IMG/VR virus record: IMGVR_UViG_3300010403_000705 | Location: 186,001 to 250,000 of that record | DNA: 64,000 bases | Reading direction: 5' to 3' (one strand) | In this document: positions 18,352 through 63,978 of the stretch, in pieces | Position numbering within the stretch: position 1 is the stretch's first letter | Layout: every line of letters starts with the position of its first letter | Program-made: the position numbers and the translations under genes | The notes under the pieces: model-generated | The model's input: the letters and a program-made list of their open reading frames with translations, nothing else | Told to the model about the DNA's origin: nothing | The model's database searches: none

Positions 18352-19752
18352 ATGCCAGTAATACATTCAATACAACACGATAAACCAGAGGAAGTGATTG
18401 ACGATATGAGTGACAATAAAGATAAATTAATTAATGAAACAAATAATGAAGAATTGAATAAAAAAGAACAAGAAAAATTAGCAGCTCTAAAAGCAAAAAA
18501 TCAAGCAAAACAACAAGAAAATCAAACAAAACAGGAGAGTAAATTGGCATCCAAAATTGTTGCAAAAAAAGAGAGAAGTCTGTCACTAGGCGTTTTAGGA
18601 TCTGGGCAGGCAGGATCTAGAATTGCTGAGGCATTTTATAAACTTGGTTACGACACTATAGTAGTTAATACAGCAATGCAAGATTTAAAATTTATTGATA
18701 TTCCAGATTCTAATAAATTGTTACTTGAATACGGTTTGGGAGGCGCAGCTAAAGAAATTGAAATTGGTAGATCTGCCGCTGAAGCTCATCGTGGAGAAGT
18801 TTTGCAATTAGTTAATGATAAATTATCTAATTCTCAAGTCAATGTATTATGTTTAAGTTTAGGTGGTGGATCCGGAGCAGGATCCTGTGAAACTTTAGTA
18901 GATCTTTTATCAGAACTAGGTAAACCTTTAATAGTAATTACAGTATTACCAATGGATACTGAAGATGCACAAACTAAAAGTAATGCACTAGAAACTTTAT
19001 CTAAATTAGCTAGGTTAACTCAAAATAAAAAAGTTAACAATTTGATTGTCGTAGATAATGCAAAAATTGAAGCCATATATCATCATATTAATCAAGTAGA
19101 TTTTTATAACGTAGCCAACAAGGCTATTGTAGATCCAATTGATGTTTTTAATACATTATCTTCTATGCCTTCCTCTACTAAAGCATTAGATCCTATGGAG
19201 TGGTCTAAATTATTTATAGATGGTGAGGGTCTTAGTGTATATGGAGAATTTTCAGTCGATAATTATCAAGAAGACACTGCTATAGCAGAAGCAGTTATTA
19301 ACAATCTTGCCGGAAATCTGTTAGCAGAAGGTTTTGATCTAAAACAATCAAAATATGTAGGTTTTATTATCGCCGCAAATAAAGAAGTTTGGTCCAAAAT
19401 TCCAGCTTCTAGTGTTAATTATGCTAGTAGTATGATTAATGATTTATGTGGAAATCCAAAAGGCGTGTTTAAGGGTATGTATATCATAGATTCTCCGGAA
19501 AATAATGTGAAAGTATTTTCGATGTTTTCTGGTCTAGGTTTGCCTACGGTAAGAGTTGAACAGCTAAAAGCTGAAACTAAAGAATTGCAGAGTAAGGTAA
19601 AGAATAAGGATGAATCAAGAAACTTAACCTTACAATTAGACACTGGAACAAATGAAACGGTATCAGCCGCTCAAAAAATTAAAGAAAAGATCGCTCAAAA
19701 ATCTTCGGCTTTTGGCAAATTAATGGGCGGGGTTGTAGATAGGAGAAAATAA
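18352..19752 (+). CDS. Tubulin/FtsZ-family GTPase (PhuZ/TubZ-like)
   Basis: GVLGSGQAGSRIA, VVNTAMQDL, GLGGAAK, signature LGGGSGAG, IVVDN, DPMEW; charged N-terminal extension. True start may be 18406. Confidence 0.85.
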   Translation: MPVIHSIQHDKPEEVIDDMSDNKDKLINETNNEELNKKEQEKLAALKAKNQAKQQENQTKQESKLASKIVAKKERSLSLGVLGSGQAGSRIAEAFYKLGYDTIVVNTAMQDLKFIDIPDSNKLLLEYGLGGAAKEIEIGRSAAEAHRGEVLQLVNDKLSNSQVNVLCLSLGGGSGAGSCETLVDLLSELGKPLIVITVLPMDTEDAQTKSNALETLSKLARLTQNKKVNNLIVVDNAKIEAIYHHINQVDFYNVANKAIVDPIDVFNTLSSMPSSTKALDPMEWSKLFIDGEGLSVYGEFSVDNYQEDTAIAEAVINNLAGNLLAEGFDLKQSKYVGFIIAANKEVWSKIPASSVNYASSMINDLCGNPKGVFKGMYIIDSPENNVKVFSMFSGLGLPTVRVEQLKAETKELQSKVKNKDESRNLTLQLDTGTNETVSAAQKIKEKIAQKSSAFGKLMGGVVDRRK

Positions 19753-27693: not shown

Positions 27694-28314
27694 ATGTTAA
27701 CAGAACAAGAAGCGCAAGATTTGATGATTAAATTAATTGATCTTAGATCAAAATCCGATAATCCAAACAATTTAAATGAATTAAAAAAACATGAACAGGT
27801 TTGTATTGAAAAGTTTAAATATCTAGTGACAATGAAAACTGGTCGATATAAAGCTTTTAGTAATTATGATGATTTAAATCAAGAAGGTTTTGAGGCTTTA
27901 ATTAAGGCTATGAATAATTATAACCCTAAGAGAGGCTCTTTTTTTTGGTGGGCACATAAATATATCGACACGCGAATTTCTAGAAGTGCTAATTTACATA
28001 CTACCATTAGATATCCTTTAAAGGTTGCAAAAAATAACACGCCACATAAAGAGACAATAATGCCAACTCTAATTGAAGAAAGACATTGCCCAGATAAAGA
28101 ATTGGAAAATTCTCAATTAGATCATGCAATACAGGGTGTGTTTACACTATTAACCACTGAACAAAAACAAGTAATTAATTTAGCATATGGTTTTGATGGA
28201 GATAAACCAATGTCTATCAATAAGATATGTAAAAAATTAAACATGTCTCGATTAAACTGTATTAAAACTATTAACAATGCTCTTTCATTAATGAAAGAGA
28301 ATATTAAAATATAA
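27694..28314 (+). CDS. Sigma70-family RNA polymerase sigma factor
   Basis: Region 2 DDLNQEGFEALIKAMNNYNPKRGSFFWWAHKYI; region 4 LTTEQKQVINLAYG...MSINKICKKLNMSR. Confidence 0.85.
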   Translation: MLTEQEAQDLMIKLIDLRSKSDNPNNLNELKKHEQVCIEKFKYLVTMKTGRYKAFSNYDDLNQEGFEALIKAMNNYNPKRGSFFWWAHKYIDTRISRSANLHTTIRYPLKVAKNNTPHKETIMPTLIEERHCPDKELENSQLDHAIQGVFTLLTTEQKQVINLAYGFDGDKPMSINKICKKLNMSRLNCIKTINNALSLMKENIKI

Positions 28315-55064: not shown

Positions 55065-55718
55065 ATGAATTTGATAAAAATAGTTAGAATGGCTGATTTA
55101 TATTATGTATTAGCTACTAATAAATCAGAAAAACTTCCAGAGAATAGTAACTCTTTATCTATTATATTAAAAAATATAGAAAATTTAGATACCTACCAAG
55201 CCAGAAAAAAATATGCAGAAAAAAATTTAAAACATTTATCTTCAGGATCATCAAGGATTGTATACGAATCACCAGAAGGTACCATAATTAAAATAGCAAA
55301 AAATGATAAGGGTATTGCACAAAATGAAGCAGAGTCTAACCCACAAATGAAATCTGATTTCTTAAATAAAATTATTAAACACGCCAAAAATTTTTCATGG
55401 ATCGAGACTTTTTATTTGGATAAAATAACAGAAGAAGATTTTAAGGATATGACTAAGTTGAAATTTTCGGATTTTGGCGATTCAATTAGTTATGGTTTGC
55501 GAGAAGTATCAAAATCTTCTTCAAAAGATAAACCTAAAAATTTTGATGAGGTCTGCAAATCAAAAATCTACAAAGAAATGAAAAGAATTGGTGAAAAGTT
55601 TAAATTGATGCCTGGAGATATAGCTAGAATATCTTCTTGGGGCACTAAAAATAATAAACCAATTTTAATAGATGCTGGATTAACAAAAGATATTTTTGAT
55701 AAATTTTATGAAGATTAA
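55065..55718 (+). CDS. Protein-kinase-like fold protein
   Basis: LSSGSSRIVY (Gly loop), IIKIA, QNEAE, GDIARISSWG, ILIDAG. Confidence 0.6.
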   Translation: MNLIKIVRMADLYYVLATNKSEKLPENSNSLSIILKNIENLDTYQARKKYAEKNLKHLSSGSSRIVYESPEGTIIKIAKNDKGIAQNEAESNPQMKSDFLNKIIKHAKNFSWIETFYLDKITEEDFKDMTKLKFSDFGDSISYGLREVSKSSSKDKPKNFDEVCKSKIYKEMKRIGEKFKLMPGDIARISSWGTKNNKPILIDAGLTKDIFDKFYED

Positions 55719-55780
55719 GATTTTTGCGATTATGGGTGATTGTGCATAATATATCAAAATTTAATAAACTTATTGACTTT

Positions 55781-56314
55781 ATGAAGATCAATACAAATTG
55801 TGTATTTTGTGGTAATAAAACACCCTTTCTTTTTAAAGAATATATGCACGAAAATGATGAACATCTTACTTATAAGTTAGATAAAGATAATAATGTAAAT
55901 CTACAAATTAGTCAATCTACTTTAAGAAATTTACAAGCTGAAAAATCTGCTTTTGTTGGCGAAGATTTTCCTAATTATTTTGTGAATTGTAATTCACAAA
56001 ATAATAGTTACTCGATCAGTTTACGCACAGATCCTATGAAAACTTGTCCGTTATTTTTTAGTGATTCTGGAACTATTGCTCCTTTTGAATTTGATTTTTT
56101 AAGATTTGAAATAATAAAAAATCAAAATGATTCTACTATTATTGTGATTAATAATTATTTTCATAGAAAAACTTTTTTAATTGACATATCCACAAGCGAG
56201 ACTCATTCTTCCATGAGACGCAGTGATTTTGTTGAGTTACCATTAATAGATTTTGATTTTACTAATAAAGAAAAAATATCACAAAAAATTAAAACTTTAA
56301 TCACATTTTTATAA
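55781..56314 (+). CDS. Zinc-ribbon array member 1 (CVFC; ends KIKTLITFL)
   Basis: Likely start MKINTNC at 55781. Confidence 0.75.
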   Translation: MKINTNCVFCGNKTPFLFKEYMHENDEHLTYKLDKDNNVNLQISQSTLRNLQAEKSAFVGEDFPNYFVNCNSQNNSYSISLRTDPMKTCPLFFSDSGTIAPFEFDFLRFEIIKNQNDSTIIVINNYFHRKTFLIDISTSETHSSMRRSDFVELPLIDFDFTNKEKISQKIKTLITFL

Positions 56315-56895
56315 TGTTTTATAAAATACAAGACTTACTAGAGTATAAAAAATATTGTTCTATTTGTGATTACCCACTTTTGGCTATATTAAAAGATCGT
56401 AGTAGTGGAATACCAAATATAAATGTGAAGTTAAACAAAAATATATTCAAATTCAGATTACAATATACTTCAGCAAGTGATTACTTAAATGAAATTTGCA
56501 TTTTAAATGTAGATACTAATGAGTTAAGCATTCTCAACAAGGATAATGATTTATTAATCATACCGGTGGTAGAAAGAATTTTTGGATATGCTTGTGTGGC
56601 AGTAGAACTGCATTGCGTAAATAATAAATGCAAATATAATTATTACGTATGTACCACTTTCTTAAAACCAATTGCAAATAAGGATATTATAATTATTAAT
56701 CCAATTCTTATTGATATAGATTGCTATAATATCTCACATTTTTGGATTCAAAATGATTATTTAAATAAAATTACTAATATTTTTTCTACCTCTAAGCCGC
56801 AAAATAAACCCATTTCGGTTCCTTTATTGGAAATCGACCCCAATAACAAAAATAAAATTTTTAATAGAATTAAAACGATTGTTAATTTTTCTTGA
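56314..56895 (+). CDS. Zinc-ribbon array member 2 (CSIC; ends RIKTIVNFS)
   Basis: TAATG overlap with the upstream gene. Confidence 0.78.
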   Translation: MFYKIQDLLEYKKYCSICDYPLLAILKDRSSGIPNINVKLNKNIFKFRLQYTSASDYLNEICILNVDTNELSILNKDNDLLIIPVVERIFGYACVAVELHCVNNKCKYNYYVCTTFLKPIANKDIIIINPILIDIDCYNISHFWIQNDYLNKITNIFSTSKPQNKPISVPLLEIDPNNKNKIFNRIKTIVNFS

Positions 56896-57641
56896 AAAGA
56901 AAGATACCTGTCATGCAAGATTTTTTATTGTCTAATAAAGTATGTCCTATTTGTCAGAATCCATTAACCTTATTCATGAAATGGTCTAGCCATGATCTGG
57001 TTATTAATAAACTTTTTAAAGGATATGAAACAAAAGATAATACATATCAATTTAAAGAATACATTGCAGCTGCGCCAATTGCGGAAAATAATTTTCATTC
57101 TTCAGATGAAATGTTGAGAAATGTGAAAGTTCTGATGATTCTAAAATTTATTAATAATGAATGCAATTTTCAATTTAATTCTCTAATAGCAGAGAAAATG
57201 GCTAAAGAACAGGAAGAATTATTTTTTTATTATATATGTAATCCTGCCGGTATTAAACCAGATAATATGATTAATATTTATGAAGCGTGTTATTATAGAG
57301 CCACTCCTCTTATGAAATTTATTGAGGGAGATTCTAGTTTATTGAAAATAAAACAATTAGACGAAAAATATAATGTCATTAATAGTTTAGAGTCTTTTAC
57401 TATAAAAGACGAAACTACTGATTCTGAATTAAAAAAGATATATATAGTTTATTTAAATTATCTTGATGAAAAACTTTCTTTTTATTACTACACGGCTACT
57501 GCTGAACAAGAAGCGTCAGAACATTATAATCCTAATATTTTTGTGGGTGAAATTCCTATTCCCAAAAATGGATTAAATCTTGATTTAAACGCCAGAGATA
57601 AATTAATTTCTAGAATGGATTCTTGGATTCTTATGTCATAA
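56892..57641 (+). CDS. Zinc-ribbon array member 3 (CPIC; ends RMDSWILMS)
   Basis: TTGA overlap; start could be 56913. Confidence 0.75.
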   Translation: MKRKIPVMQDFLLSNKVCPICQNPLTLFMKWSSHDLVINKLFKGYETKDNTYQFKEYIAAAPIAENNFHSSDEMLRNVKVLMILKFINNECNFQFNSLIAEKMAKEQEELFFYYICNPAGIKPDNMINIYEACYYRATPLMKFIEGDSSLLKIKQLDEKYNVINSLESFTIKDETTDSELKKIYIVYLNYLDEKLSFYYYTATAEQEASEHYNPNIFVGEIPIPKNGLNLDLNARDKLISRMDSWILMS

Positions 57642-57714
57642 TAGACACTATTACCCATCCAGCATAGAAACCTAGAAAATTGACATCTTTCTATCGGAAT
57701 AAAAAAAAATTTAT

Positions 57715-58800
57715 ATGCAAACAATAAATCAACTATTAGAATCTTGTAAAAATAAATTGGTATTTCTGCAAAATATGATACCTATCACGCAAAATCAAAA
57801 TAGGTTAAAAGAAATAGATGATTTGGTAAGTAATAGTAATATCTGGGCTTCTCCTAAAGAAGCCGCTTCTCTAATGAAAGAACGTCAAAAAGTTTCTGAC
57901 ATATTAAAGAAATTGTCTTCTTATCAAGATCAGATTAATTTTTACATAGAGTGTCAACAGTATATGCCAGAAGAATTAATAAAAATTTCTTCACAGGTAG
58001 AAGATTTGCATAAAGATATTTCTTTGTTTGAATTTAAACAGATGATGAATGATCCTATAGATGATAGTCCAGCTATTCTTACTATTAATGCTGGTGCTGG
58101 CGGATTAGAAGCTGCCAATTGGACCAGTATGTTATTGCGTATGTATTCTAGATATGCAGATTCAAATAAGTTTAAACTAGAAATGCTAGATATGAAACCC
58201 TCAGAAGAACATGCAAGTATTTGTACTGACTGTGTTTCTATAAGAGTGGAAGGTCCGTACGCATATGGATTTTTAAAAGGTGAGGCGGGAGTTCATAGAT
58301 TAATAAGAAATTCTCCGTTCAATTCAGGAGATGCTAGGCATACTTCTTTTGCTGCCGTGGCTGTTTTACCAGATATTGAAGACAAATTATCAATTGATAT
58401 TCAAATAAATGAGAAAGATATAGAAATTACTACTATGCGCGCCTCTGGTGCAGGTGGACAAAATGTTAATAAAGTAGAAAGTGCTGTTAGATTAAAACAC
58501 ATTCCAACAGGAATTGTAATTAATTCTCGTTCTGAAAGAGATCAGCATACCAATAGAAAAATAGCTATGAAGATTCTGAAAGCAAAACTTTATGAAATAG
58601 AAATGCAAAAACAGAATAAAGAGAAAGAAAAATATTTCTCCAGCATGCAAGATAATTCTTTTGGTCATCAAATAAGGTCTTATATTTTATTTCCAACTCA
58701 GATGGTCAAAGATCATCGAACAAATTTTGAAGTAAGAGATGCGGAAAAAGTCTTAGATGGAGATATTGAAGAATTCATTATGGCTTATTTACATTCTTAA
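57715..58800 (+). CDS. prfB: Peptide chain release factor 2, no programmed frameshift
   Basis: [14 protein letters not shown] (SPF), [17 protein letters not shown] (GGQ), QIRSY. Confidence 0.93.
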
Positions 58801-58805
58801 TCAAA

Positions 58806-59381
58806 ATGATAAGTAATTTTACCATCAAAGATTTTATTAATTATAATAATCCATGTTTTTGCTGCGGAAATTCAGTTTCACTAAAAATGTTTTCTAGCGC
58901 AGATGAAATTATGGGCAGTGGAATAGTCCTAATTCCTGCCGTATATCAAAATGCACTAGAAGTGGATTTGGAAATTACCTATCTTTCAACTTTAAAATTA
59001 AAAATTTATCCAAAAACTAATAAATTTATTTCTTCGAGTCATGATAGCTTGACAAAATACTTACAAGGACGTAAACTGTCTTTGATAAGCAGATGTGATG
59101 GTTGTAGTACATTCGTTAAAAGTTTGAGTTTGGAATTTAATTTGGATAGAGAATTTATAAAACCTCTTTCTATTGAAGAAGAAATGTTGTTTTTATACGA
59201 TAAAGATTTTTTATTTAGGGTTAGATCTTTATTTAAAAATAATTACAGCGAATTGCTTATTATTAAATATAAAAAACCTTCCGAAACGTTCAAATTAACA
59301 ATGCCTCTTCAGCCAAGAAGTAAATTTAAAAATACACAACAGCTTCTAAAAAAAATAAAAACTTTAATGCTTTTCTCTTAA
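58806..59381 (+). CDS. Zinc-ribbon array member 4 (CFCC...CDGC; ends KIKTLMLFS)
   Basis: N-terminus IKDFINYNNPC resembles member 2 (IQDLLEYKKYC). Confidence 0.78.
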   Translation: MISNFTIKDFINYNNPCFCCGNSVSLKMFSSADEIMGSGIVLIPAVYQNALEVDLEITYLSTLKLKIYPKTNKFISSSHDSLTKYLQGRKLSLISRCDGCSTFVKSLSLEFNLDREFIKPLSIEEEMLFLYDKDFLFRVRSLFKNNYSELLIIKYKKPSETFKLTMPLQPRSKFKNTQQLLKKIKTLMLFS

Positions 59382-59425
59382 ATACATTGCTTATCATAAT
59401 GGTGTCCTTGCAGAAGGAATAAATT

Positions 59426-59767
59426 ATGAATAGTTCACACAATTGTCCGATTTGTAAAACTCTTATGATGGAAGATAAATATACTTTTCCAATCCCAGAA
59501 TCAACTGATTTGATCTGTCGTCAAGATAATCATTTTTTTGTAAAAAGAATTAGCCCAGTTACCAATCAAGTTTCGGAATTGAAAATTAAACTTCAGTGCG
59601 GAGAAGAAGAGCTGTATCTTAAAATAAATTATAATAGAAATTACACTGATGTATGGGCGACCGCAAATAATTCAAAACATATTAGAATTCCATATATCTT
59701 GATGTCAGATTTTGAAGATTTTAATAAAATTAAACATAAAATAAAAACTTGCCTTCTTTTTTCTTAA
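59426..59767 (+). CDS. Zinc-ribbon array member 5 (CPIC...C..DNH; ends KIKTCLLFS)
   Basis: AAGGA upstream. Confidence 0.78.
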   Translation: MNSSHNCPICKTLMMEDKYTFPIPESTDLICRQDNHFFVKRISPVTNQVSELKIKLQCGEEELYLKINYNRNYTDVWATANNSKHIRIPYILMSDFEDFNKIKHKIKTCLLFS

Positions 59768-59769
59768 TT

Positions 59770-60111
59770 ATGCAAATGCCAATTAAATGCCCAATCTGTT
59801 CCGGACCCATGAATAATGATTTTCTTCCATCTTCCGGCGGAAAAGAATATCTAAGGAAGTGTTGCGAAGTAAAACTAAATCATAAAATTATTTATACTTC
59901 TTCCATAAATCATGATGAGGTGCAGCAGTTTGATCTAATATTATCACTTGATAAGTTATCAGTAGCAAGATTTGTTTGGTCACCAAATCATAAAATACTT
60001 AATGTATATAAAAATAACACTCATACAACCAATATTCCATATTTTGAACCGCAATTAAATAACTTAAAAGCTCTAAAAGACAAGTTAAAATTGTATTTAT
60101 TATTCTTATAG
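59770..60111 (+). CDS. Zinc-ribbon array member 6 (CPIC...CC...NH; ends KLKLYLLFL)
   Basis: Likely start MQMPIKC at 59770. Confidence 0.75.
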   Translation: MQMPIKCPICSGPMNNDFLPSSGGKEYLRKCCEVKLNHKIIYTSSINHDEVQQFDLILSLDKLSVARFVWSPNHKILNVYKNNTHTTNIPYFEPQLNNLKALKDKLKLYLLFL

Positions 60112-60131
60112 CTGATGTTATATGAAATGCC

Positions 60132-60455
60132 ATGAAAGAGTTTTCCTATTGCCCAATTTGTGCGAATAAATTAAAAAGCCGACTGTTTAAGGATAACATT
60201 AAACTTCTTTCTTGCCAGGAAGGAGTGGCACATTACATTTCTTTTAAATTGCAAGACCAACAAATGTCAAACATGACATTATACTTAGATAATTATTCGT
60301 ACTTGGAAATGGATTTTTTAAAACAAATATCTACCTATTACTATGATCCTTTAAATGGGATGGCTAAGCTGGTGATTCCTAAAATTATAGAACCGGATTT
60401 TCCGCAACTCAAAAATTTAAAAGAAAAACTATTAAAGTATGTGTTGTTTACATAA
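60132..60455 (+). CDS. Zinc-ribbon array member 7 (CPIC...C...AH; ends KLLKYVLFT)
   Basis: Same layout as neighbours. Confidence 0.78.
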   Translation: MKEFSYCPICANKLKSRLFKDNIKLLSCQEGVAHYISFKLQDQQMSNMTLYLDNYSYLEMDFLKQISTYYYDPLNGMAKLVIPKIIEPDFPQLKNLKEKLLKYVLFT

Positions 60456-60497
60456 TCTTTTGGTAATTTACCAGTCTCTTGCATCTGTTGTTTTTAT

Positions 60498-60860
60498 ATG
60501 AAATGTGTGTTTTGTGATAATGATTGTGTCATACAAGCCAGAAGTAATTCCGCTTGTGAAAAGTATATGAAATTTGCGATGTTTTATCCTATTTGTAAAA
60601 TATGTCAAATATCCTATAAAGTCAACTGGTCAAAAAGAGAATATATATCTGCGATTGTTTTTATGATCAAAGATCAAGAAACTTGTCCAACTATTGTTAC
60701 TAATCATCTGATTATAGACGTACAAGAAAATTCTACCAAACTATTCGGTCGTGCCAATTTTGATAAACCTATTATTGATCTTTCTTATGCGATGGACATT
60801 CATCCAAATAATTTGTATGAACGTTTAACAAAATTAAAGAAATTAATTTTATTCTCATAA
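60498..60860 (+). CDS. Zinc-ribbon array member 8 (CVFC...CKIC; ends KLKKLILFS)
   Basis: Same layout as neighbours. Confidence 0.78.
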   Translation: MKCVFCDNDCVIQARSNSACEKYMKFAMFYPICKICQISYKVNWSKREYISAIVFMIKDQETCPTIVTNHLIIDVQENSTKLFGRANFDKPIIDLSYAMDIHPNNLYERLTKLKKLILFS

Positions 60861-60861
60861 T

Positions 60862-61194
60862 ATGAATTGTTATTACTGTAAACAAAATATTGATGTTATG
60901 TCATTGTGGTCTTATAGTAAAAATACTGTATTTTGTGAAAAATGTAAAGCTTATCAGAGTTATCACCAAGGATATTTATATAATATTTGTTTTATGTTCG
61001 ATGAAAATAAATCAGTCTCTGATCAGTCTACGAAAAAAGGTTACTGGATCGTAATCAATGTTGTGAGAAATCAATTCTCATTAGAGTTAAATAACTCAAT
61101 AATTATTAAGGATCTGCCCGAAGCTGATAAAATCACTCCTGCTAATGTACAAGAAACACTGTATAGACTATTGAGGTTAAAAGCGTATCTTTAA
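60862..61194 (+). CDS. Zinc-ribbon array member 9 (CYYC...CEKC; ends RLLRLKAYL)
   Basis: Zinc-ribbon body carrying the KAF-type tag variant. Confidence 0.78.
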   Translation: MNCYYCKQNIDVMSLWSYSKNTVFCEKCKAYQSYHQGYLYNICFMFDENKSVSDQSTKKGYWIVINVVRNQFSLELNNSIIIKDLPEADKITPANVQETLYRLLRLKAYL

Positions 61195-61199
61195 GTTAG

Positions 61200-61480
61200 A
61201 GAGTGTGAGGTGTGTTATTAAAAGATAATGCTATAAGATGCTTAAATAAAGATTAAGAGATAAAAATCGATTATTGGAGATATGGTTGGTAATTTGAGAA
61301 GGTTTGAGGGTGAGTAGAAGCTGAGATATGATAATACTGAGAGTAAAATGCAGTTAAATTATTACTTAACCCTCATTTGGGGGGCAAGGATCGTGCCCGC
61401 TCGACCCATCGCCAACCTTTCCATCGCTCACTGTATTGCCCTGTGGCGCGTTCTGTCTCTAAGACCTTACCCATCCTTTA
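61200..61480. other. Non-coding junction with GC-skew inversion and GC-content step
   Basis: Hand count: about 42 G vs 5 C in 61201-61350, about 15 G vs 35 C in 61391-61480; GGGGGG at 61379-61384. Confidence 0.65.
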
Positions 61481-61565
61481 TATGATGTATAATAATAAAT
61501 TTATCTTGTAGATAATGATCTTATTATTAATCATCTCCCATCATTGATCATATTAATAATTAATT

Positions 61566-61757
61566 ATGCAAACCAGACCCGTTATCGTGGTTTCCATTCA
61601 AACTAGCCTCAGATCATTCGAGATTCGGGCTTATCATGGGTCACCCATCGGCAAAAAGCGTTCGGCAGTCGATGCTATGCAAGCCGCACAACGTGGTAAG
61701 ACCGTGGTGTGGAGCAATGACGGGCGGGAACCCATCACCTTCAATGCCAGAGGCTAG
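61566..61757 (+). CDS. Small hypothetical protein
   Basis: 63 aa, first ORF after an AT-rich spacer. Confidence 0.55.
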   Translation: MQTRPVIVVSIQTSLRSFEIRAYHGSPIGKKRSAVDAMQAAQRGKTVVWSNDGREPITFNARG

Positions 61758-61761
61758 GGAT

Positions 61762-61902
61762 ATGGATCCTGTCATCATGATTCTGGTTTGGATCGGCGGG
61801 GCTTTCGGCTTTCAAGAGCGTTGGCACTGGAAGGGAACCGTAGGGTATCTGATTACTACGATGGTCTTGCAGTTCATCATCAGTTACTCACCCATCATCT
61901 AA
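61762..61902 (+). CDS. Small membrane protein (46 aa)
   Basis: MDPVIMILVWIGGAFG...KGTVGYLITTMVLQFII; GAGG/GGGA upstream. Confidence 0.55.
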   Translation: MDPVIMILVWIGGAFGFQERWHWKGTVGYLITTMVLQFIISYSPII

Positions 61903-61920
61903 TGGTCTCTGAGAGATATC

Positions 61921-62202
61921 ATGGAACTCCTTCTCACCAGCGTCCTGTTCATTGTCTGCTGTTTCATTGGCAAAGGCAAAGGAGTTGCAGCATACCTGAT
62001 TGGTACAGTGGCTATCATAGTGATGAGCAATCACCAAGCTGATATGTTGCAACTGTATAACAACCATCAGTTGCCGTTGCTTATCGGGGCTTCCATCATT
62101 CCCATCATCTCTATTATGATTAGCCGGTGGTGGGGACTATTCTTCTATCTGTTCGCTTCTATAGCAGTCACGGCTCTTGTCATAGCTACTGTCGTGGTCT
62201 AA
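61921..62202 (+). CDS. Multi-pass membrane protein (family A)
   Basis: GKGVAAYLIGT...YNNHQ...ISRWWGLFFY; GAGAG upstream. Confidence 0.75.
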   Translation: MELLLTSVLFIVCCFIGKGKGVAAYLIGTVAIIVMSNHQADMLQLYNNHQLPLLIGASIIPIISIMISRWWGLFFYLFASIAVTALVIATVVV

Positions 62203-62205
62203 TGA

Positions 62206-62234
62206 AGAGGGGGACTAGCGCCCCCTCTGTTGTT
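62206..62234 (+). terminator. Hairpin terminator-like
   Basis: AGAGGGGG-7 nt-CCCCCTCT, then GTTGTT, just after the stop. Confidence 0.65.
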
Positions 62235-62246
62235 AGAGTTGTGACT

Positions 62247-62281
62247 TGGTACATCACTTGCAGATTGCATATTCAATGCCA
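62247..62281. promoter_or_regulatory. 35-bp dyad of sigma54-like arms (copy 1)
   Basis: TGGTACATCACTTGCA-gat-TGCATATTCAATGCCA. Confidence 0.7.
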
Positions 62282-62334
62282 AGTGATGTAGATGATTGTT
62301 AGAGACCCATCAAGTAATCAATCTGAAATTAACT

Positions 62335-62637
62335 ATGCTCCTCATCTCGATCCTCTCCTTGGTTCTGTCAATCACCTCGATCTTCGTGGGTGGTGGCAAA
62401 GGAATTGCTATGTGGGTGATTGGCACGATTGCCTTAATCATCGCTGGCAACTTTCTGGGGAATGTGATTCAGATGTACAGCAATCATCAGGGACCCATCC
62501 TCCTGGCAACTGCGGGGATTCAGGTAGTGGCGATTCTCATCTCGCGGTGGTGGGGTTTGGTTTTTTACTTCGTTGCTTCGGTGGGTCTTACCCTGGTTCT
62601 TTTCCTCGGTGCCCTGGCTACCATGACGGTTGGTTGA
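62335..62637 (+). CDS. Multi-pass membrane protein (family A paralog)
   Basis: GKGIAMWVIGT...YSNHQ...ISRWWGLVFY. Confidence 0.75.
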   Translation: MLLISILSLVLSITSIFVGGGKGIAMWVIGTIALIIAGNFLGNVIQMYSNHQGPILLATAGIQVVAILISRWWGLVFYFVASVGLTLVLFLGALATMTVG

Positions 62638-62671
62638 TAGACCCATCTACTTGTTGCTCGGAGAGATAGCA

Positions 62672-62815
62672 ATGCTAACCATCTTTTGGCTGATTGGTCT
62701 GCTTTACTGTTGCATTAAGTCCGGTTCGGAAGGAGTAGCTTTTTACCTGCTGGCAACCTTCCTGTTTTTTCTTCTGTTAGGTCGTGTCAATTACAGCTTG
62801 CATAGTGGGTTCTAA
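62672..62815 (+). CDS. Small membrane protein (family A, short)
   Basis: CCIKSGSEGVAFYLLAT; GGAGA upstream. Confidence 0.6.
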   Translation: MLTIFWLIGLLYCCIKSGSEGVAFYLLATFLFFLLLGRVNYSLHSGF

Positions 62816-62835
62816 CCAATCTGTTGTATGCTGGT

Positions 62836-62870
62836 AGTCCTGGATCCTCCTAAAATAAGGATCCAGGACT
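62836..62870 (+). terminator. 13-bp stem hairpin
   Basis: AGTCCTGGATCCT-9 nt-AGGATCCAGGACT. Confidence 0.65.
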
Positions 62871-62890
62871 TACCTGTCATCTATTCTTGT

Positions 62891-62925
62891 TGGCATATCA
62901 ATTGCAATATACAGTATCTATACCA
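62891..62925. promoter_or_regulatory. 35-bp dyad of sigma54-like arms (copy 2)
   Basis: TGGCATATCAATTGCA-ata-TACAGTATCTATACCA. Confidence 0.7.
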
Positions 62926-62978
62926 AGGTGCAAAAAAGACTACTGCAAACCCATCCATTATTGATCTTGCTCTAAGTT

Positions 62979-63134
62979 ATGAAGAACCTCTTTTGGTACG
63001 GTGTGGTCTTCGTGGGCGGTTTGTTCGTTGGGACGCAGTACATCTCTCCCATCCTGCCGCAGTTGAATCATACTGTGACGGCGATTTCGGATGGCGCCAG
63101 TAGCGTCAAGTCGTCTCTTCCCAAGGTCAAGTAA
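62979..63134 (+). CDS. Small N-anchored membrane protein (family B, 51 aa, not in ORF track)
   Basis: MKNLFWYGVVFVGGLFVGTQYISPILPQLNHTVTAISDGASSVKSSLPKVK; paralog of 63170. Confidence 0.7.
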   Translation: MKNLFWYGVVFVGGLFVGTQYISPILPQLNHTVTAISDGASSVKSSLPKVK

Positions 63135-63169
63135 GTCCTGCGCCGACTCTTACATTACGATAAGCGACA

Positions 63170-63358
63170 ATGAAGACCATCTTTCTGACTTTGACTCTGG
63201 TTGTTGGTGGAATGTATGTGGGCGTCAAGTATGTGGCACCTATTGTGCCGCAAGCTCACATTCCGACGGCGGTAGAGTTCAAGGATGCTTTGCATAAGCT
63301 GCATCAGGAAGTCTCTTGTCCGGTCGGACCCAATCAGAGTAAGTGTCGCAAGATGTAA
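63170..63358 (+). CDS. Small N-anchored membrane protein (family B)
   Basis: MKTIFLTLTLVVGGMYVGVKYVAPIVPQ. Confidence 0.7.
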   Translation: MKTIFLTLTLVVGGMYVGVKYVAPIVPQAHIPTAVEFKDALHKLHQEVSCPVGPNQSKCRKM

Positions 63359-63388
63359 CCCATCACGATCGAAAGGATACTCAATATC

Positions 63389-63589
63389 ATGAATTATTCT
63401 CCGCAGAAGCGTGCTGCCCGTACTCGTGAGCTGAACCGGCTGATTGACGCGCAGCTCAAAGATGACGACGCTCGACCCGCCCGCGTCAAGCGTCTTCGGG
63501 CTCCCATCGACGACACCGATCTGCTGCCTGATCTCTACCGCTCTCCACGCGGTCGGCGTAAGCAGAAGCCGCACCATACCCACGACTGA
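63389..63589 (+). CDS. Small basic protein
   Basis: Arg-rich 66 aa, GAAAGGA upstream, GC-rich codons. Confidence 0.7.
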   Translation: MNYSPQKRAARTRELNRLIDAQLKDDDARPARVKRLRAPIDDTDLLPDLYRSPRGRRKQKPHHTHD

Positions 63590-63596
63590 ACCAACT

Positions 63597-63626
63597 ATGC
63601 CTGGCACCTTTTAGGTTGCCAGGCAT
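63597..63626 (+). terminator. Hairpin terminator-like
   Basis: ATGCCTGGCA-CC-TTTT-AGG-T-TGCCAGGCAT, then TATTATTT. Confidence 0.7.
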
Positions 63627-63646
63627 TATTATTTAAACTAGTTGTT

Positions 63647-63785
63647 TGGCATATGAGTTGCAATTAGCACAAGCTGTACCAAGGGCAAATTTAATAAGCC
63701 TGCACTTATGGCACGGAAGTTGTAATTAGCATAAGCTGTTCCAAGTCTTATGGCACGCTAGTTGCTAACTACAAGTCTTGTACCA
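63647..63785. promoter_or_regulatory. Three tandem 35-bp sigma54-like dyads (63647-63681, 63709-63743, 63751-63785)
   Basis: TGGCATATGAGTTGCA-att-AGCACAAGCTGTACCA; TGGCACGGAAGTTGTA-att-AGCATAAGCTGTTCCA; TGGCACGCTAGTTGCT-aac-TACAAGTCTTGTACCA. Confidence 0.75.
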
Positions 63786-63978
63786 AGCTCTGTGATGTCT
63801 TAGAAGACACCCATCAATTACTATGATGTTGCTTAGACACCGGTTGACGCTAAGCAAAGCGCGAAACCGAAGCGGTGGCGAATAGCTGCTGCGCCCCTTA
63901 CGGTGGTTTCTCTCTCCCATCCCGTAAAGGGGTGATCCAATAAGAGAGACAGATTCCAGCAACCAAAAGGAGCGCATC

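What the first reader, a model, noticed from the sequence alone, without database searches (positions are those of the whole stretch)
61200..61565. Sharp junction: GC-skew inversion and GC step around a GGGGGG tract
SEEN: 280+ nt of non-coding DNA follow the last array gene. The + strand is G-rich and almost C-free up to about 61350 (about 42 G vs 5 C), passes CCCTCATTTGGGGGGCAAGGATCGTGCCC (small GGGCA/TGCCC hairpin), then turns C-rich. Downstream coding lines sampled are 50-60% GC, versus about 15% in a sampled core line. AT-rich spacers persist (61490-61565), so this does not look like ordinary host chromosome. INFERENCE: a physical genome end or terminal-repeat boundary, packaging site or replication origin separating the core genome from a first-injected early region adapted to a GC-rich host.
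Basis: partly seen in the sequence, partly recalled or inferred. Interest (0 to 1): 0.6.

Follow-up and report, generated by a model that had tools for sequence, protein, structure and literature searches.

The report
Megaphage early-region boundary, GC sawtooth
The sharp GC jump is real: it is the conserved starting point of the early-gene region of a roughly 447-kb bacteriophage, and from it GC content and a one-strand 6-base word (CCCATC) fall away over more than 100 kb, an unusual genome-wide sawtooth suggesting the DNA is used, and perhaps enters the cell, from this point onward.

Summary
After the last array gene come 371 non-coding bases. A G-rich, C-poor tract (44 G, 5 C) has the strongest skew in the window. 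The GC step sits at 61369/61370.

It is neither an assembly chimera nor a prophage-host joint. The same step, next to the same genes, occurs in at least five other independently assembled megaphage contigs and about ten metagenome fragments. A single-copy conserved box lies exactly at the step.

To the right begin dozens of small, fast-evolving genes with phage-type domains and tRNAs. They carry palindromic sigma-54-like sites and the strand-specific word CCCATC (157 on +, 3 on -, in 34.6 kb).

GC is highest at the junction (GC3 0.55 here; 0.71 and 0.42 in two relatives). It decays over 100-130 kb back to the 30% GC core. Orthologues take the local composition, so the pressure is positional and lineage-specific.

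Best reading: this is the zero point of an early, host-takeover region tuned to a GC-richer host, with later hand-over to phage tRNAs that read AT-rich codons.

The parts
60862..61194 (+). Last gene of the CxxC...LFS paralogue array. It ends the 29% GC core; the RF2 gene lies at 57715-58800 inside the array.
   Evidence: ORF list; Pfam PCRF and RF-1 domains for RF2. RF2 lies 3-9 kb left of the step in G001, G002, L151 and L152 as well.
61195..61369 (+). Non-coding G-rich, C-poor tract (44 G, 5 C in 61195-61350). It contains box A at 61225-61242 (AATGYNATARGATGCT in G000, G001, G002).
   Evidence: The polarity of the tract is not conserved: L151, G001 and L152 are C-rich here because a minus-strand gene sits there.
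61370..61425 (.). Junction box, single copy per genome. It consists of a C-run, T-run and G-run, then B1 (61376-61397) and B2 (61403-61422, which includes the first CCCATC at 61405). The GC step falls on its first base.
   Evidence: Unique in G000, G001 and G002 by fuzzy search. Aligned in 5 and in 12 relatives. Step position.
61376..61397 (-). B1 read on the minus strand. It is GGGCACG-N4-TTGCC here and TTGGCACG-N4-TTGCC in relatives, i.e. the sigma-54 -24/-12 consensus, pointing left. The N4 spacer varies freely among relatives.
   Evidence: This is a sequence resemblance only; no sigma-54 or activator gene was found in the phage.
61426..61481 (+). C-rich tract with the second CCCATC at 61470.
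61482..61534 (.). AT-rich near-palindrome (25-nt arms, 76% complementary, 3-nt centre) holding a perfect TATAAT at 61488-61493. It is flanked by CCCATC at 61470 and 61537.
61566..61757 (+). First early ORF (63 aa). It is conserved as the first gene right of the junction in G001 (two copies) and L151.
   Evidence: alignment A3.
61921..62637 (+). Two paralogous small membrane proteins (61921-62202 and 62335-62637) with FIGKGKG...SRWWGL motifs. They are conserved right of the junction in L151 and G001.
   Evidence: alignment A4.
62247..63788 (+). Five palindromic sites of about 37 bp, TGGYAY-N5-TTGCA-N3-TGCA-N7-TRCCAA, starting at 62247, 62891, 63647, 63709 and 63751. Each lies between a gene end and the next CCCATC.
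   Evidence: Six matches in the window against 0.5 expected, four of them here; the 63709 site has TTGTA rather than TTGCA and comes from the looser pattern. Genome-wide distribution and consensus.
61405..63921 (+). Sixteen copies of CCCATC on the + strand (0.6 expected from base composition) and none on the - strand. Starts: 61405, 61470, 61537, 61644, 61731, 61891, 62101, 62306, 62494, 62642, 62950, 63048, 63359, 63503, 63810, 63916.
   Evidence: Only 4 copies occur in the preceding 61.4 kb.

Best explanation
The junction is the fixed upstream boundary (zero point) of the immediate-early, host-takeover region of a roughly 447-kb, almost unidirectionally transcribed megaphage.

Shown:
- A single-copy conserved control box lies exactly at the GC step.
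- To its right begin more than 80 small genes with their own palindromic promoter- or operator-like sites, terminator-like hairpins and a CCCATC leader word.
- GC content (GC3 above all, but also GC1, GC2 and spacers) and CCCATC density are highest at the boundary. They decline with distance over 100-130 kb to the 30% GC core.
- The decline depends on position and on lineage, not on which gene is present.

Inferred:
- The phage has a sigma-70-family gene, and no RNA polymerase of its own was detected. Early genes would therefore be read by unmodified host machinery of a GC-richer host and are kept host-like.
- Phage tRNAs for AGA, AUA, UUA and UUG are encoded inside the gradient. They then allow the AT-rich remainder of the genome to be translated.

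More weakly inferred (about 0.35-0.4): a sawtooth with a single discontinuity needs a polar process that starts at this point. The junction may therefore lie at or within a few hundred bases of the end that enters or is used first (a terminal-repeat boundary or pac/cos site).
For: - **Step and skew.**
- **Same step beside the same genes.** RF2 and the array lie on the left; the small protein and membrane proteins lie on the right. This holds in G001 (core 0.33-0.36, then 0.61), G002 (0.26-0.30, then 0.41), L150/L151 (then 0.55-0.69) and L152 (then 0.58-0.67). About ten metagenome relatives show an AT-rich left flank and a GC-richer right flank.
- **Junction box.** Unique per genome and conserved.
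- **GC-rich side is phage DNA.** It carries DUF6197, an AAA_33/polynucleotide-kinase-like ATPase, a DEAH helicase, UvrD, RtcB, amidoligases and tRNAs.
- **Composition at the boundary.** GC3 goes from 0.17-0.21 to 0.55, 0.71 and 0.42 in G000, G001 and G002. Spacer GC goes from 0.25 to 0.45.
- **Decline with distance.** Spearman correlation of distance against GC3 is -0.82, -0.86 and -0.57.
- **Orthologues.** G000 versus G001 GC3 is 0.47/0.73, 0.30/0.61 and 0.25/0.54 in the gradient but 0.19/0.28 in the core. Displaced orthologues take the local value.
- **Faster evolution.** Mean identity is 46% in the first 35 kb against 67-68% in the core.
- **CCCATC.** 157 on + against 3 on - in 34.6 kb, with about 5.5 expected. 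An ATG lies exactly 23-25 nt downstream in three lineages. In G002 the word is part of the box CCCATC-N4-TAACGG-N13-ATG before about 50 of 84 early genes. In G003 it is part of a 13-mer repeated 38 times (42 in a shorter 8-nt form) after terminators.
- **Codons and tRNAs.** AGA, ATA and TTA rise from 7.8, 6.8 and 5.8 per 1000 in the early block to 21, 33 and 53 in the core. The first seven tRNAs after the junction are Leu-CAA, Arg-TCT, Leu-CAA, Ile-TAT, Tyr-GTA, Leu-TAA and Leu-TAA.
- **Transcription machinery.** A sigma-70-family gene is present and no RNA polymerase beta subunit was found.
- **Gene orientation.** 588 of 645 called genes are on the + strand.
Against: - No expression, read-start or coverage data could be obtained, so 'early' rests on anatomy and analogy.
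- Spacer GC and GC1/GC2 also shift. Codon selection alone cannot explain this, so a DNA-level pressure is needed as well (silencer avoidance, biased repair, or unknown).
- Replication genes (DnaB, UvsW-like helicase, ribonucleotide reductase) lie 30-40 kb upstream of the junction, at the far end of the polar map. This does not fit a simple order-of-entry timetable.
- In G000 and G001 only about 10% of CCCATC copies sit in the leader register. Most copies are therefore unexplained.
- In G001 and in L150/L151 a minus-strand trypsin-like protease gene starts 250-330 nt left of the box. The DNA on both sides is then probably used together.
- The host and its GC content are unknown.
Confidence: 0.65

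Rival explanations
1. The junction is itself a physical terminus, with the GC-rich end leading into the cell. It would be the boundary of a direct terminal repeat or a cos/pac cleavage site; this was the first reader's main idea. It is not exclusive of the best explanation.
For: A sawtooth with one discontinuity on an otherwise circular map needs a polar start. Genes are almost all co-oriented away from it. The junction box is unique and conserved. One metagenome contig (L240) starts 1 nt before the box and another (L255) 143 nt before it. Breaks in three long contigs fall inside the first 40 kb after the junction. From my own knowledge, T7, T5, N4 and SPO1 place their early genes at the leading end.
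Against: Six long contigs read through the junction, are permuted relative to each other, and have no end overlaps. No second sharp boundary that could close a terminal repeat was found; the drop at about +32 kb is gradual on a 100-nt scale. A divergent protease gene abuts the box in three relatives, two of them near-identical copies. No read data are available.
Confidence: 0.35
2. The junction is a unidirectional replication origin. A promoter (box A) would feed a G-rich transcript that forms an R-loop primer next to an AT-rich unwinding element. The gradient would be a replication-linked mutational effect.
For: The strongest local G-over-C skew in the window lies on the non-template strand. 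An AT-rich 25-nt-arm near-palindrome lies 110 nt downstream. Replication genes lie within 40 kb.
Against: The G-rich polarity is not conserved; L151, G001 and L152 are C-rich there. There are no iterons (DnaA boxes were only looked for by eye). GC skew stays positive genome-wide with no extremum at the junction. Replication asymmetry changes skew, not GC content by 20-35 points. The fold of the tract is not unusual (z = -1.09).
Confidence: 0.1
3. The GC-rich block is recently acquired foreign DNA, host-derived or from another phage, added at a plastic site and slowly ameliorating towards the phage's AT-rich composition. The gradient would then record gene age.
For: Few orthologues and low identity near the junction. 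Many ORFan genes.
Against: Shared orthologues, which are equally old in both lineages, differ by 0.26-0.31 in GC3 inside the gradient but by only 0.08-0.09 in the core. Displaced orthologues adopt the local GC3, for example 0.20 at 122 kb against 0.58 at 45 kb. The first genes after the junction are conserved across lineages. The CCCATC word and the palindromes are shared across lineages that peak at 42%, 52% and 61-70% GC.
Confidence: 0.07
4. The junction is an artefact: a chimeric assembly, or a prophage-host joint as the IMG/VR 'provirus' label implies.
For: IMG/VR calls G000, G001 and G003 proviruses. The step is abrupt.
Against: The same junction with conserved flanks appears in at least six independent assemblies. 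The GC-rich side grades back into the core with no second joint. The contigs are collinear circular permutations of 447-452 kb. The GC-rich side carries phage-type genes and shared phage-specific motifs. No tRNA or att-like repeat lies at the joint.
Confidence: 0.02

Closest known systems
T7 class I early region at the leading (left) genome end, with host-RNA-polymerase promoters and transcription-coupled genome entry (own knowledge)
   Same: All genes are co-oriented away from one point. Host-polymerase-type promoters are clustered right after it. Small early genes come first.
   Different: The genome is ten times larger. No phage RNA polymerase was found, only a sigma factor. T7 has no composition gradient and no oriented hexamer. 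The ends are not shown here.
SPO1 host-takeover module within the terminal redundancy, and the T5 pre-early first-step-transfer region (own knowledge)
   Same: A dense block of many small, fast-evolving ORFs, each with its own promoter and terminator, beginning at a defined genome landmark.
   Different: Those modules share the GC content of the rest of the genome. Here the block is 15-35 GC points above the core and fades over 100 kb. A terminal repeat is not demonstrated.
Early-versus-late codon-usage differences and phage tRNAs compensating for late-gene codons (Cowe and Sharp 1991 for T4, own knowledge; PMC5683454, listed)
   Same: Early genes use host-like codons. Phage tRNAs match codons that are enriched in later genes.
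   Different: The magnitude is far larger (GC3 0.55-0.73 against 0.17-0.28). The dependence is continuous and positional, and non-coding DNA is involved too. Searches found no report of such a gradient.
Sigma-54 (RpoN) -24/-12 promoters, TGGCACG-N4-TTGCW (own knowledge)
   Same: The junction box B1 (minus strand) and both halves of the early-region palindromes have GG and GC at the canonical spacing and near-consensus flanks.
   Different: The sites are palindromic, which suggests a dimeric binding protein. No sigma-54 or enhancer-binding ATPase gene is present in the phage. Activity is untested.
Oriented over-represented oligomers such as Chi, FtsK KOPS, or T4 RegB GGAG targets in early mRNAs (own knowledge)
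   Same: CCCATC is short, strictly one-stranded, about 28-fold over-represented, and densest next to a putative end. Its orientation would suit a Chi read as GATGGG by an enzyme entering at the junction.
   Different: CCCATC sits in a fixed register 23-25 nt before start codons and within longer lineage-specific leader boxes. This points to transcription or RNA rather than DNA-end processing. The factor that recognises it is unknown.

Membership tests
Phage genome terminus (direct-terminal-repeat boundary, cos or pac site) | Pile-up of read starts or ends at a fixed base, and for a terminal repeat a block of about twofold coverage | not testable with these tools
Phage genome terminus (direct-terminal-repeat boundary, cos or pac site) | Independent assemblies break at the same base, or contig ends carry the repeat | tested here: inconclusive
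   Six long contigs span the junction, with ends at different places and no overlaps. One short contig starts 1 nt before the box.
Replication origin | Iterons or DnaA boxes next to an AT-rich unwinding element | tested here: not met
   An AT-rich near-palindrome is present, but there is no repeated box family. DnaA boxes were only looked for by eye.
Replication origin | Genome-wide switch or extremum of cumulative GC skew at the site | tested here: not met
   Skew is positive almost everywhere, and the inversion at the junction is only local.
Prophage-host junction (att site) | Host genes on one side; att direct repeat or tRNA target; not conserved as a unit in relatives | tested here: not met
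   Phage-type genes lie on the GC-rich side. No tRNA lies at the joint. Both flanks are conserved in relatives. The maps are circularly permuted.
Early / host-takeover gene module | Dense run of small ORFs, each with its own promoter-like site and terminator, evolving faster than the core | tested here: met
Early / host-takeover gene module | Transcribed first after infection | not testable with these tools
   No RNA data and no cultured member are available.
Sigma-54-dependent promoter | GG and GC elements 10 bp apart with TGGCAC / TTGC flanks | tested here: met
   B1 on the minus strand in relatives is TTGGCACG-N4-TTGCC. Twelve such sites occur within 40 kb after the junction in G000.
Sigma-54-dependent promoter | Dependence on RpoN and an enhancer-binding AAA+ activator | tested here: inconclusive
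   The phage encodes neither. The host is unknown. The palindromic build suggests another binding protein.
Chi-like recombination or nuclease-control word | Oriented, over-represented oligomer recognised by the host's RecBCD or AddAB | tested here: inconclusive
   Orientation and over-representation are met. The fixed register to start codons argues for an expression signal. Recognition cannot be tested.
Structured RNA gene (Rfam families, tRNA, tmRNA) | Match to a covariance model, or a fold more stable than shuffled sequence | tested here: not met
   No Rfam match at E up to 5. No tRNA or tmRNA. Fold z = -1.09.

The most novel reading that the evidence does not exclude
These 447-kb phages are read 'like a tape' from one fixed point. 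The genome would enter, or become accessible, slowly and in one direction, for example pulled in by host transcription. Selection would then tune base composition, codon usage and the density of an oriented CCCATC signal to the time at which each stretch arrives. That would give a positional GC sawtooth whose amplitude follows the host's GC content. CCCATC would be a polar signal for the machinery that moves or reads the DNA, or a shield for the exposed leading end.
Probability: 0.25. Interest if true: 0.9.

Novelty: new variant of a known kind. Interest (0 to 1): 0.72.

Why it matters
- Intragenomic composition in phages is usually treated as uniform, or as a sign of contamination. Here the IMG/VR pipeline labelled these genomes 'provirus', and about 15 kb appears to have been trimmed from this one (inferred from the length of its apparent source contig).
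- A conserved, position-dependent GC and codon gradient that starts at one base and spans a quarter of a 447-kb genome would be a new kind of evidence about how very large phage genomes are deployed in time.
- The peak GC could serve as a handle for host prediction.
- The gradient gives a natural system for separating codon-level from DNA-level selection.
- The junction box, the palindromes and the CCCATC leader are concrete, testable regulatory elements for an uncultured clade.

Tried and rejected
- **RNA gene at the junction.** No Rfam match, no tRNA, and the fold of 61195-61480 is no better than shuffles (z = -1.09). The idea of a long G-arm/C-arm hairpin was dropped.
- **Terminal overlap.** None found in G000, G001, G002 or G003.
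- **Second sharp boundary that could close a terminal repeat.** GC and motif density drop at about +32 kb in G000 and G002. The drop is gradual at 100-nt scale, has no conserved element, and is not at an orthologous place in G001.
- **More junctions in the viral collection.** The exact B1 pattern found only G001. The B2 pattern gave 51 hits, of which only the already known relatives were genuine.
- **More distant relatives.** Contigs with TerL identity of 72-74% that are 47-62% complete showed no CCCATC clusters. G004 (first 300 kb) showed no step.
- **The window's untrimmed contig.** The 447,633-bp JGI contig could not be reached as a genome.
- **CCCATC as a -35 element.** A -10-like hexamer at fixed spacing appeared only in G002, where it overlaps the start codon (TAATATG), so this was rejected.
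- **Stop-codon recoding.** Reading TAG or TGA as sense barely lengthens ORFs.
- **Phage RNA polymerase.** No beta-subunit match. The T7-type search was uninformative because its control did not ring.
- **Literature.** Seven searches and one review found no description of such a gradient or of the motif.

Full report
**1. What the window is**

The window is bases 186,001-250,000 of a 432,844-bp IMG/VR virus record, labelled 'provirus' and 97% complete by CheckV. A metagenome scan returned a 447,633-bp JGI contig with an identical junction sequence (L231). The viral record is therefore probably a trimmed copy of that contig.

The 29% GC part carries jumbo-phage genes:
- a TubZ/PhuZ-like tubulin;
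- a UvsW-like helicase and DnaB;
- ribonucleotide reductase;
- a PIN-PhoH protein;
- a release factor 2 gene;
- a large terminase at genome 118 kb;
- a sigma-70-family gene.

No RNA polymerase beta subunit, sigma-54 or sigma-54 activator was found.

**2. The observation**

- 371 non-coding bases follow the last array gene.
- 61200-61350 holds exactly 42 G and 5 C.
- The 156-nt window at 61195 has skew +0.80, the highest of 6,385 windows (mean 0.083, sd 0.187).
- The next 111 nt are C-rich (40 C, 23 G).
- 61470-61565 is 21% GC.
- The largest GC rise in the window falls at 61369/61370, on the first base of the quoted sequence.

**3. The wider picture: a sawtooth**

In the whole record GC is 28-34% from base 1 to 247 kb. 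It jumps to 51-52%, then falls gradually: 44-46% to about +32 kb, 36-41% to about +100 kb, and back to about 31% by +130-150 kb. There is one sharp edge and no second one.

At the edge:
- GC3 rises from 0.17-0.21 to 0.55;
- GC1, GC2 and spacer GC also rise (spacers from 0.25 to 0.45);
- distance from the junction predicts GC3, with Spearman -0.82 over 196 genes.

**4. It is conserved, so it is not an artefact**

The terminase finds 164 related viral contigs at 69-83% identity. I read three of them in full: G001, G002 and G003.
- G001 (446.5 kb) has the same step: core 0.33-0.36 rising to 0.61, GC3 0.71.
- G002 (447.8 kb) has it with a lower amplitude: 0.26-0.30 rising to 0.41, GC3 0.42.
- In both, the decay runs across the arbitrary contig ends.
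- Three further contigs found through RF2 have the step at 55-69% GC. Two of them are near-identical.
- G003 (361 kb) ends inside a 55-65% GC block.

G000, G001 and G002 are collinear circular permutations of each other, and none has overlapping ends. On the left of the step lie RF2 and the paralogue array. On the right lie a small conserved protein and paralogous membrane proteins. The GC-rich side has phage-type domains and tRNAs. A chimera or a prophage-host joint is excluded for practical purposes, so the 'provirus' label is most likely caused by the GC step.

**5. The junction box**

The only well-conserved non-coding sequence lies exactly at the step (window 61370-61425). It is a C-run, T-run and G-run followed by two boxes:
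- B1, GGCAA-N4-CGTGCC with flanks;
- B2, which contains the first CCCATC followed by CC-N-ACCTTT.

The box is single-copy in each genome. A metagenome scan with B1 found about ten more distinct relatives. Each has an AT-richer left flank (0.32-0.45) and a GC-richer right flank (0.47-0.62). In most of them TGGCAY-N5-TTGC sites follow 40-60 nt to the right. Other hits from that scan were unrelated chance matches, including what looks like a tRNA arm.

Read on the minus strand, B1 is TTGGCACG-N4-TTGCC, the textbook sigma-54 -24/-12 consensus, with a freely varying spacer, and it points left. In G001 and L151 a minus-strand trypsin-like protease gene starts 250-330 nt to the left. G000 and G002 lack that gene.

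The G-rich polarity itself is not conserved. The tract folds no better than shuffles, and no Rfam family or tRNA matches.

**6. The early region's own signals**

(a) Palindromes. A palindrome of about 37 bp, TGGYAY-N5-TTGCA-N3-TGCA-N7-TRCCAA, occurs 12 times in the first 40 kb of G000 (five of them in the window), 13 times in G002 and twice in G001. It always lies in spacers, and the next CCCATC usually follows 42-64 nt downstream. Each half has sigma-54 spacing. However, the symmetry, the lack of left-right covariation and the absence of phage sigma-54 or activator genes make a dimeric binding protein at least as likely.

(b) The word CCCATC.
- In G000 it occurs 157 times on + and 3 times on - in 34.6 kb, against about 5.5 expected.
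- In the window it occurs 16 times on + and 0 on -, against 0.6 expected.
- Its density falls with GC in all three genomes.
- It is enriched in spacers, and an ATG follows exactly 23-25 nt downstream.
- In G002 it belongs to a box, CCCATC-N4-TAACGG-N13-ATG, in front of about 50 of 84 early genes.
- In G003 it belongs to a 13-mer (CCCATCGGTCAAC) repeated 38 times (42 counting the 8-nt core CCCATCGG) just after terminators.
- B2 at the junction looks like the first copy of this box, in a form resembling the longer boxes of G002 and G003.
- In G000 and G001 only about 10% of copies are in the leader register, and the rest occur in all reading frames.

A transcription- or RNA-level signal fits best. 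A Chi-like shield for an end entering at the junction has the right orientation and cannot be excluded.

**7. The gradient is positional and lineage-specific**

| Distance from junction | G000 GC3 | G001 GC3 |
|---|---|---|
| 0-35 kb | 0.47 | 0.73 |
| 35-70 kb | 0.30 | 0.61 |
| 70-100 kb | 0.25 | 0.54 |
| Core | 0.19 | 0.28 |

These are orthologue pairs. Orthologues that sit at different distances in the two genomes take the local value. This argues against gene-age amelioration and for an active pressure tied to distance from the junction.

Protein identity is lowest next to the junction: 46% against 67-68% in the core.

Codons AGA, ATA and TTA rise 3- to 9-fold from the early block to the core. 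The first seven of the phage's 39 tRNA genes after the junction are Leu-CAA, Arg-TCT, Leu-CAA, Ile-TAT, Tyr-GTA, Leu-TAA and Leu-TAA; apart from Tyr-GTA they read exactly these codons or UUG.

That early and late phage genes differ in codon usage is known (PMC5683454, listed; T4 work from memory). A continuous positional gradient of this size was not found in the literature searches.

**8. Interpretation**

Shown:
- a real, conserved, unique boundary;
- an early-type gene block beginning at it;
- a polar, positional composition and motif gradient.

Inferred: host-adapted early expression, with hand-over to phage tRNAs and a phage sigma factor.

Weaker inference: the polar process that sets the zero point is DNA entry or packaging, which would make the junction a terminus or pac site. 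One contig starting 1 nt before the box, and contig breaks clustered in the first 40 kb, are mild support. The divergent protease gene, and replication genes sitting at the far end of the map, are mild counter-evidence.

An origin is less likely. There are no iterons, no global skew switch and no conserved polarity of the G-rich tract.

**9. Limits**

There are no reads, no expression data and no known host. ORF calls in the GC-rich part come from a simple longest-ORF rule, and the minus-strand calls there are probably shadows. The sigma-54 reading is a sequence resemblance only.

Noticed in passing
window 55065-61194: An array of about ten paralogous small genes with an N-terminal CxxC motif and a conserved C-terminal K-x-K-x-L-x-LFS tail. 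The release factor 2 gene (57715-58800) is embedded in it. The same array with RF2 lies left of the junction in G001, L151 and G002.
   Followed up: partly
genome 58,637 (outside the window) and window 57715-58800: A tRNA with anticodon CTA, which reads TAG and which ARAGORN labels Pyl, occurs together with a phage RF2 gene. These are parts typical of TAG-recoding phages. However, ORF totals barely change if TAG is read as sense, and TAG is only a rarer stop in the core (6.5%) than in the early block (18.5%).
   Followed up: partly
window 62247, 62891, 63647, 63709, 63751; G002 and G001 early regions: A palindrome of about 37 bp whose halves each match the sigma-54 -24/-12 layout. It recurs in early-region spacers of three lineages, and the next CCCATC lies 42-64 nt downstream.
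   Followed up: partly
G002 (loci L133, L134, L112-L113), first 40 kb after its junction: Nearly every early gene is preceded by CCCATC-N4-TAACGG-N13-ATG, often without an obvious Shine-Dalgarno sequence. This may be an unusual leader or translation signal.
   Followed up: partly
G003 (loci L206-L207, reverse strand), first 28 kb: The 13-mer CCCATCGGTCAAC occurs 38 times (42 counting the 8-nt core CCCATCGG), each within a repeat of about 50 nt that follows a terminator-like hairpin. The contig starts inside one copy, so the assembly probably broke on this repeat.
   Followed up: partly
L151 13413-14138 (-); L095 6444-7175 (+ in locus, minus relative to the phage map): A trypsin-like serine protease with an N-terminal hydrophobic segment lies immediately left of the junction and is oriented away from it. 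It is seen in G001 and in L151; its near-identical copy L150 presumably has it too (not examined). It is absent from G000 and G002.
   Followed up: partly
whole record: IMG/VR labels G000, G001 and G003 'provirus', and G000 is 14.8 kb shorter than its apparent source contig (447,633 bp). The GC step probably misled the host-region trimming.
   Followed up: partly
window 18352-19752 and 27694-28314: A TubZ/PhuZ-like tubulin and a sigma-70-family sigma factor are encoded in the core. Thirty-nine tRNA genes, all on the + strand, include a cluster of about 20 at genome 401-408 kb.
   Followed up: no
genome 10-15 kb (outside the window): Four CCCATC copies occur in one 5-kb bin of the otherwise motif-free core, against about 0.2 expected.
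   Followed up: no
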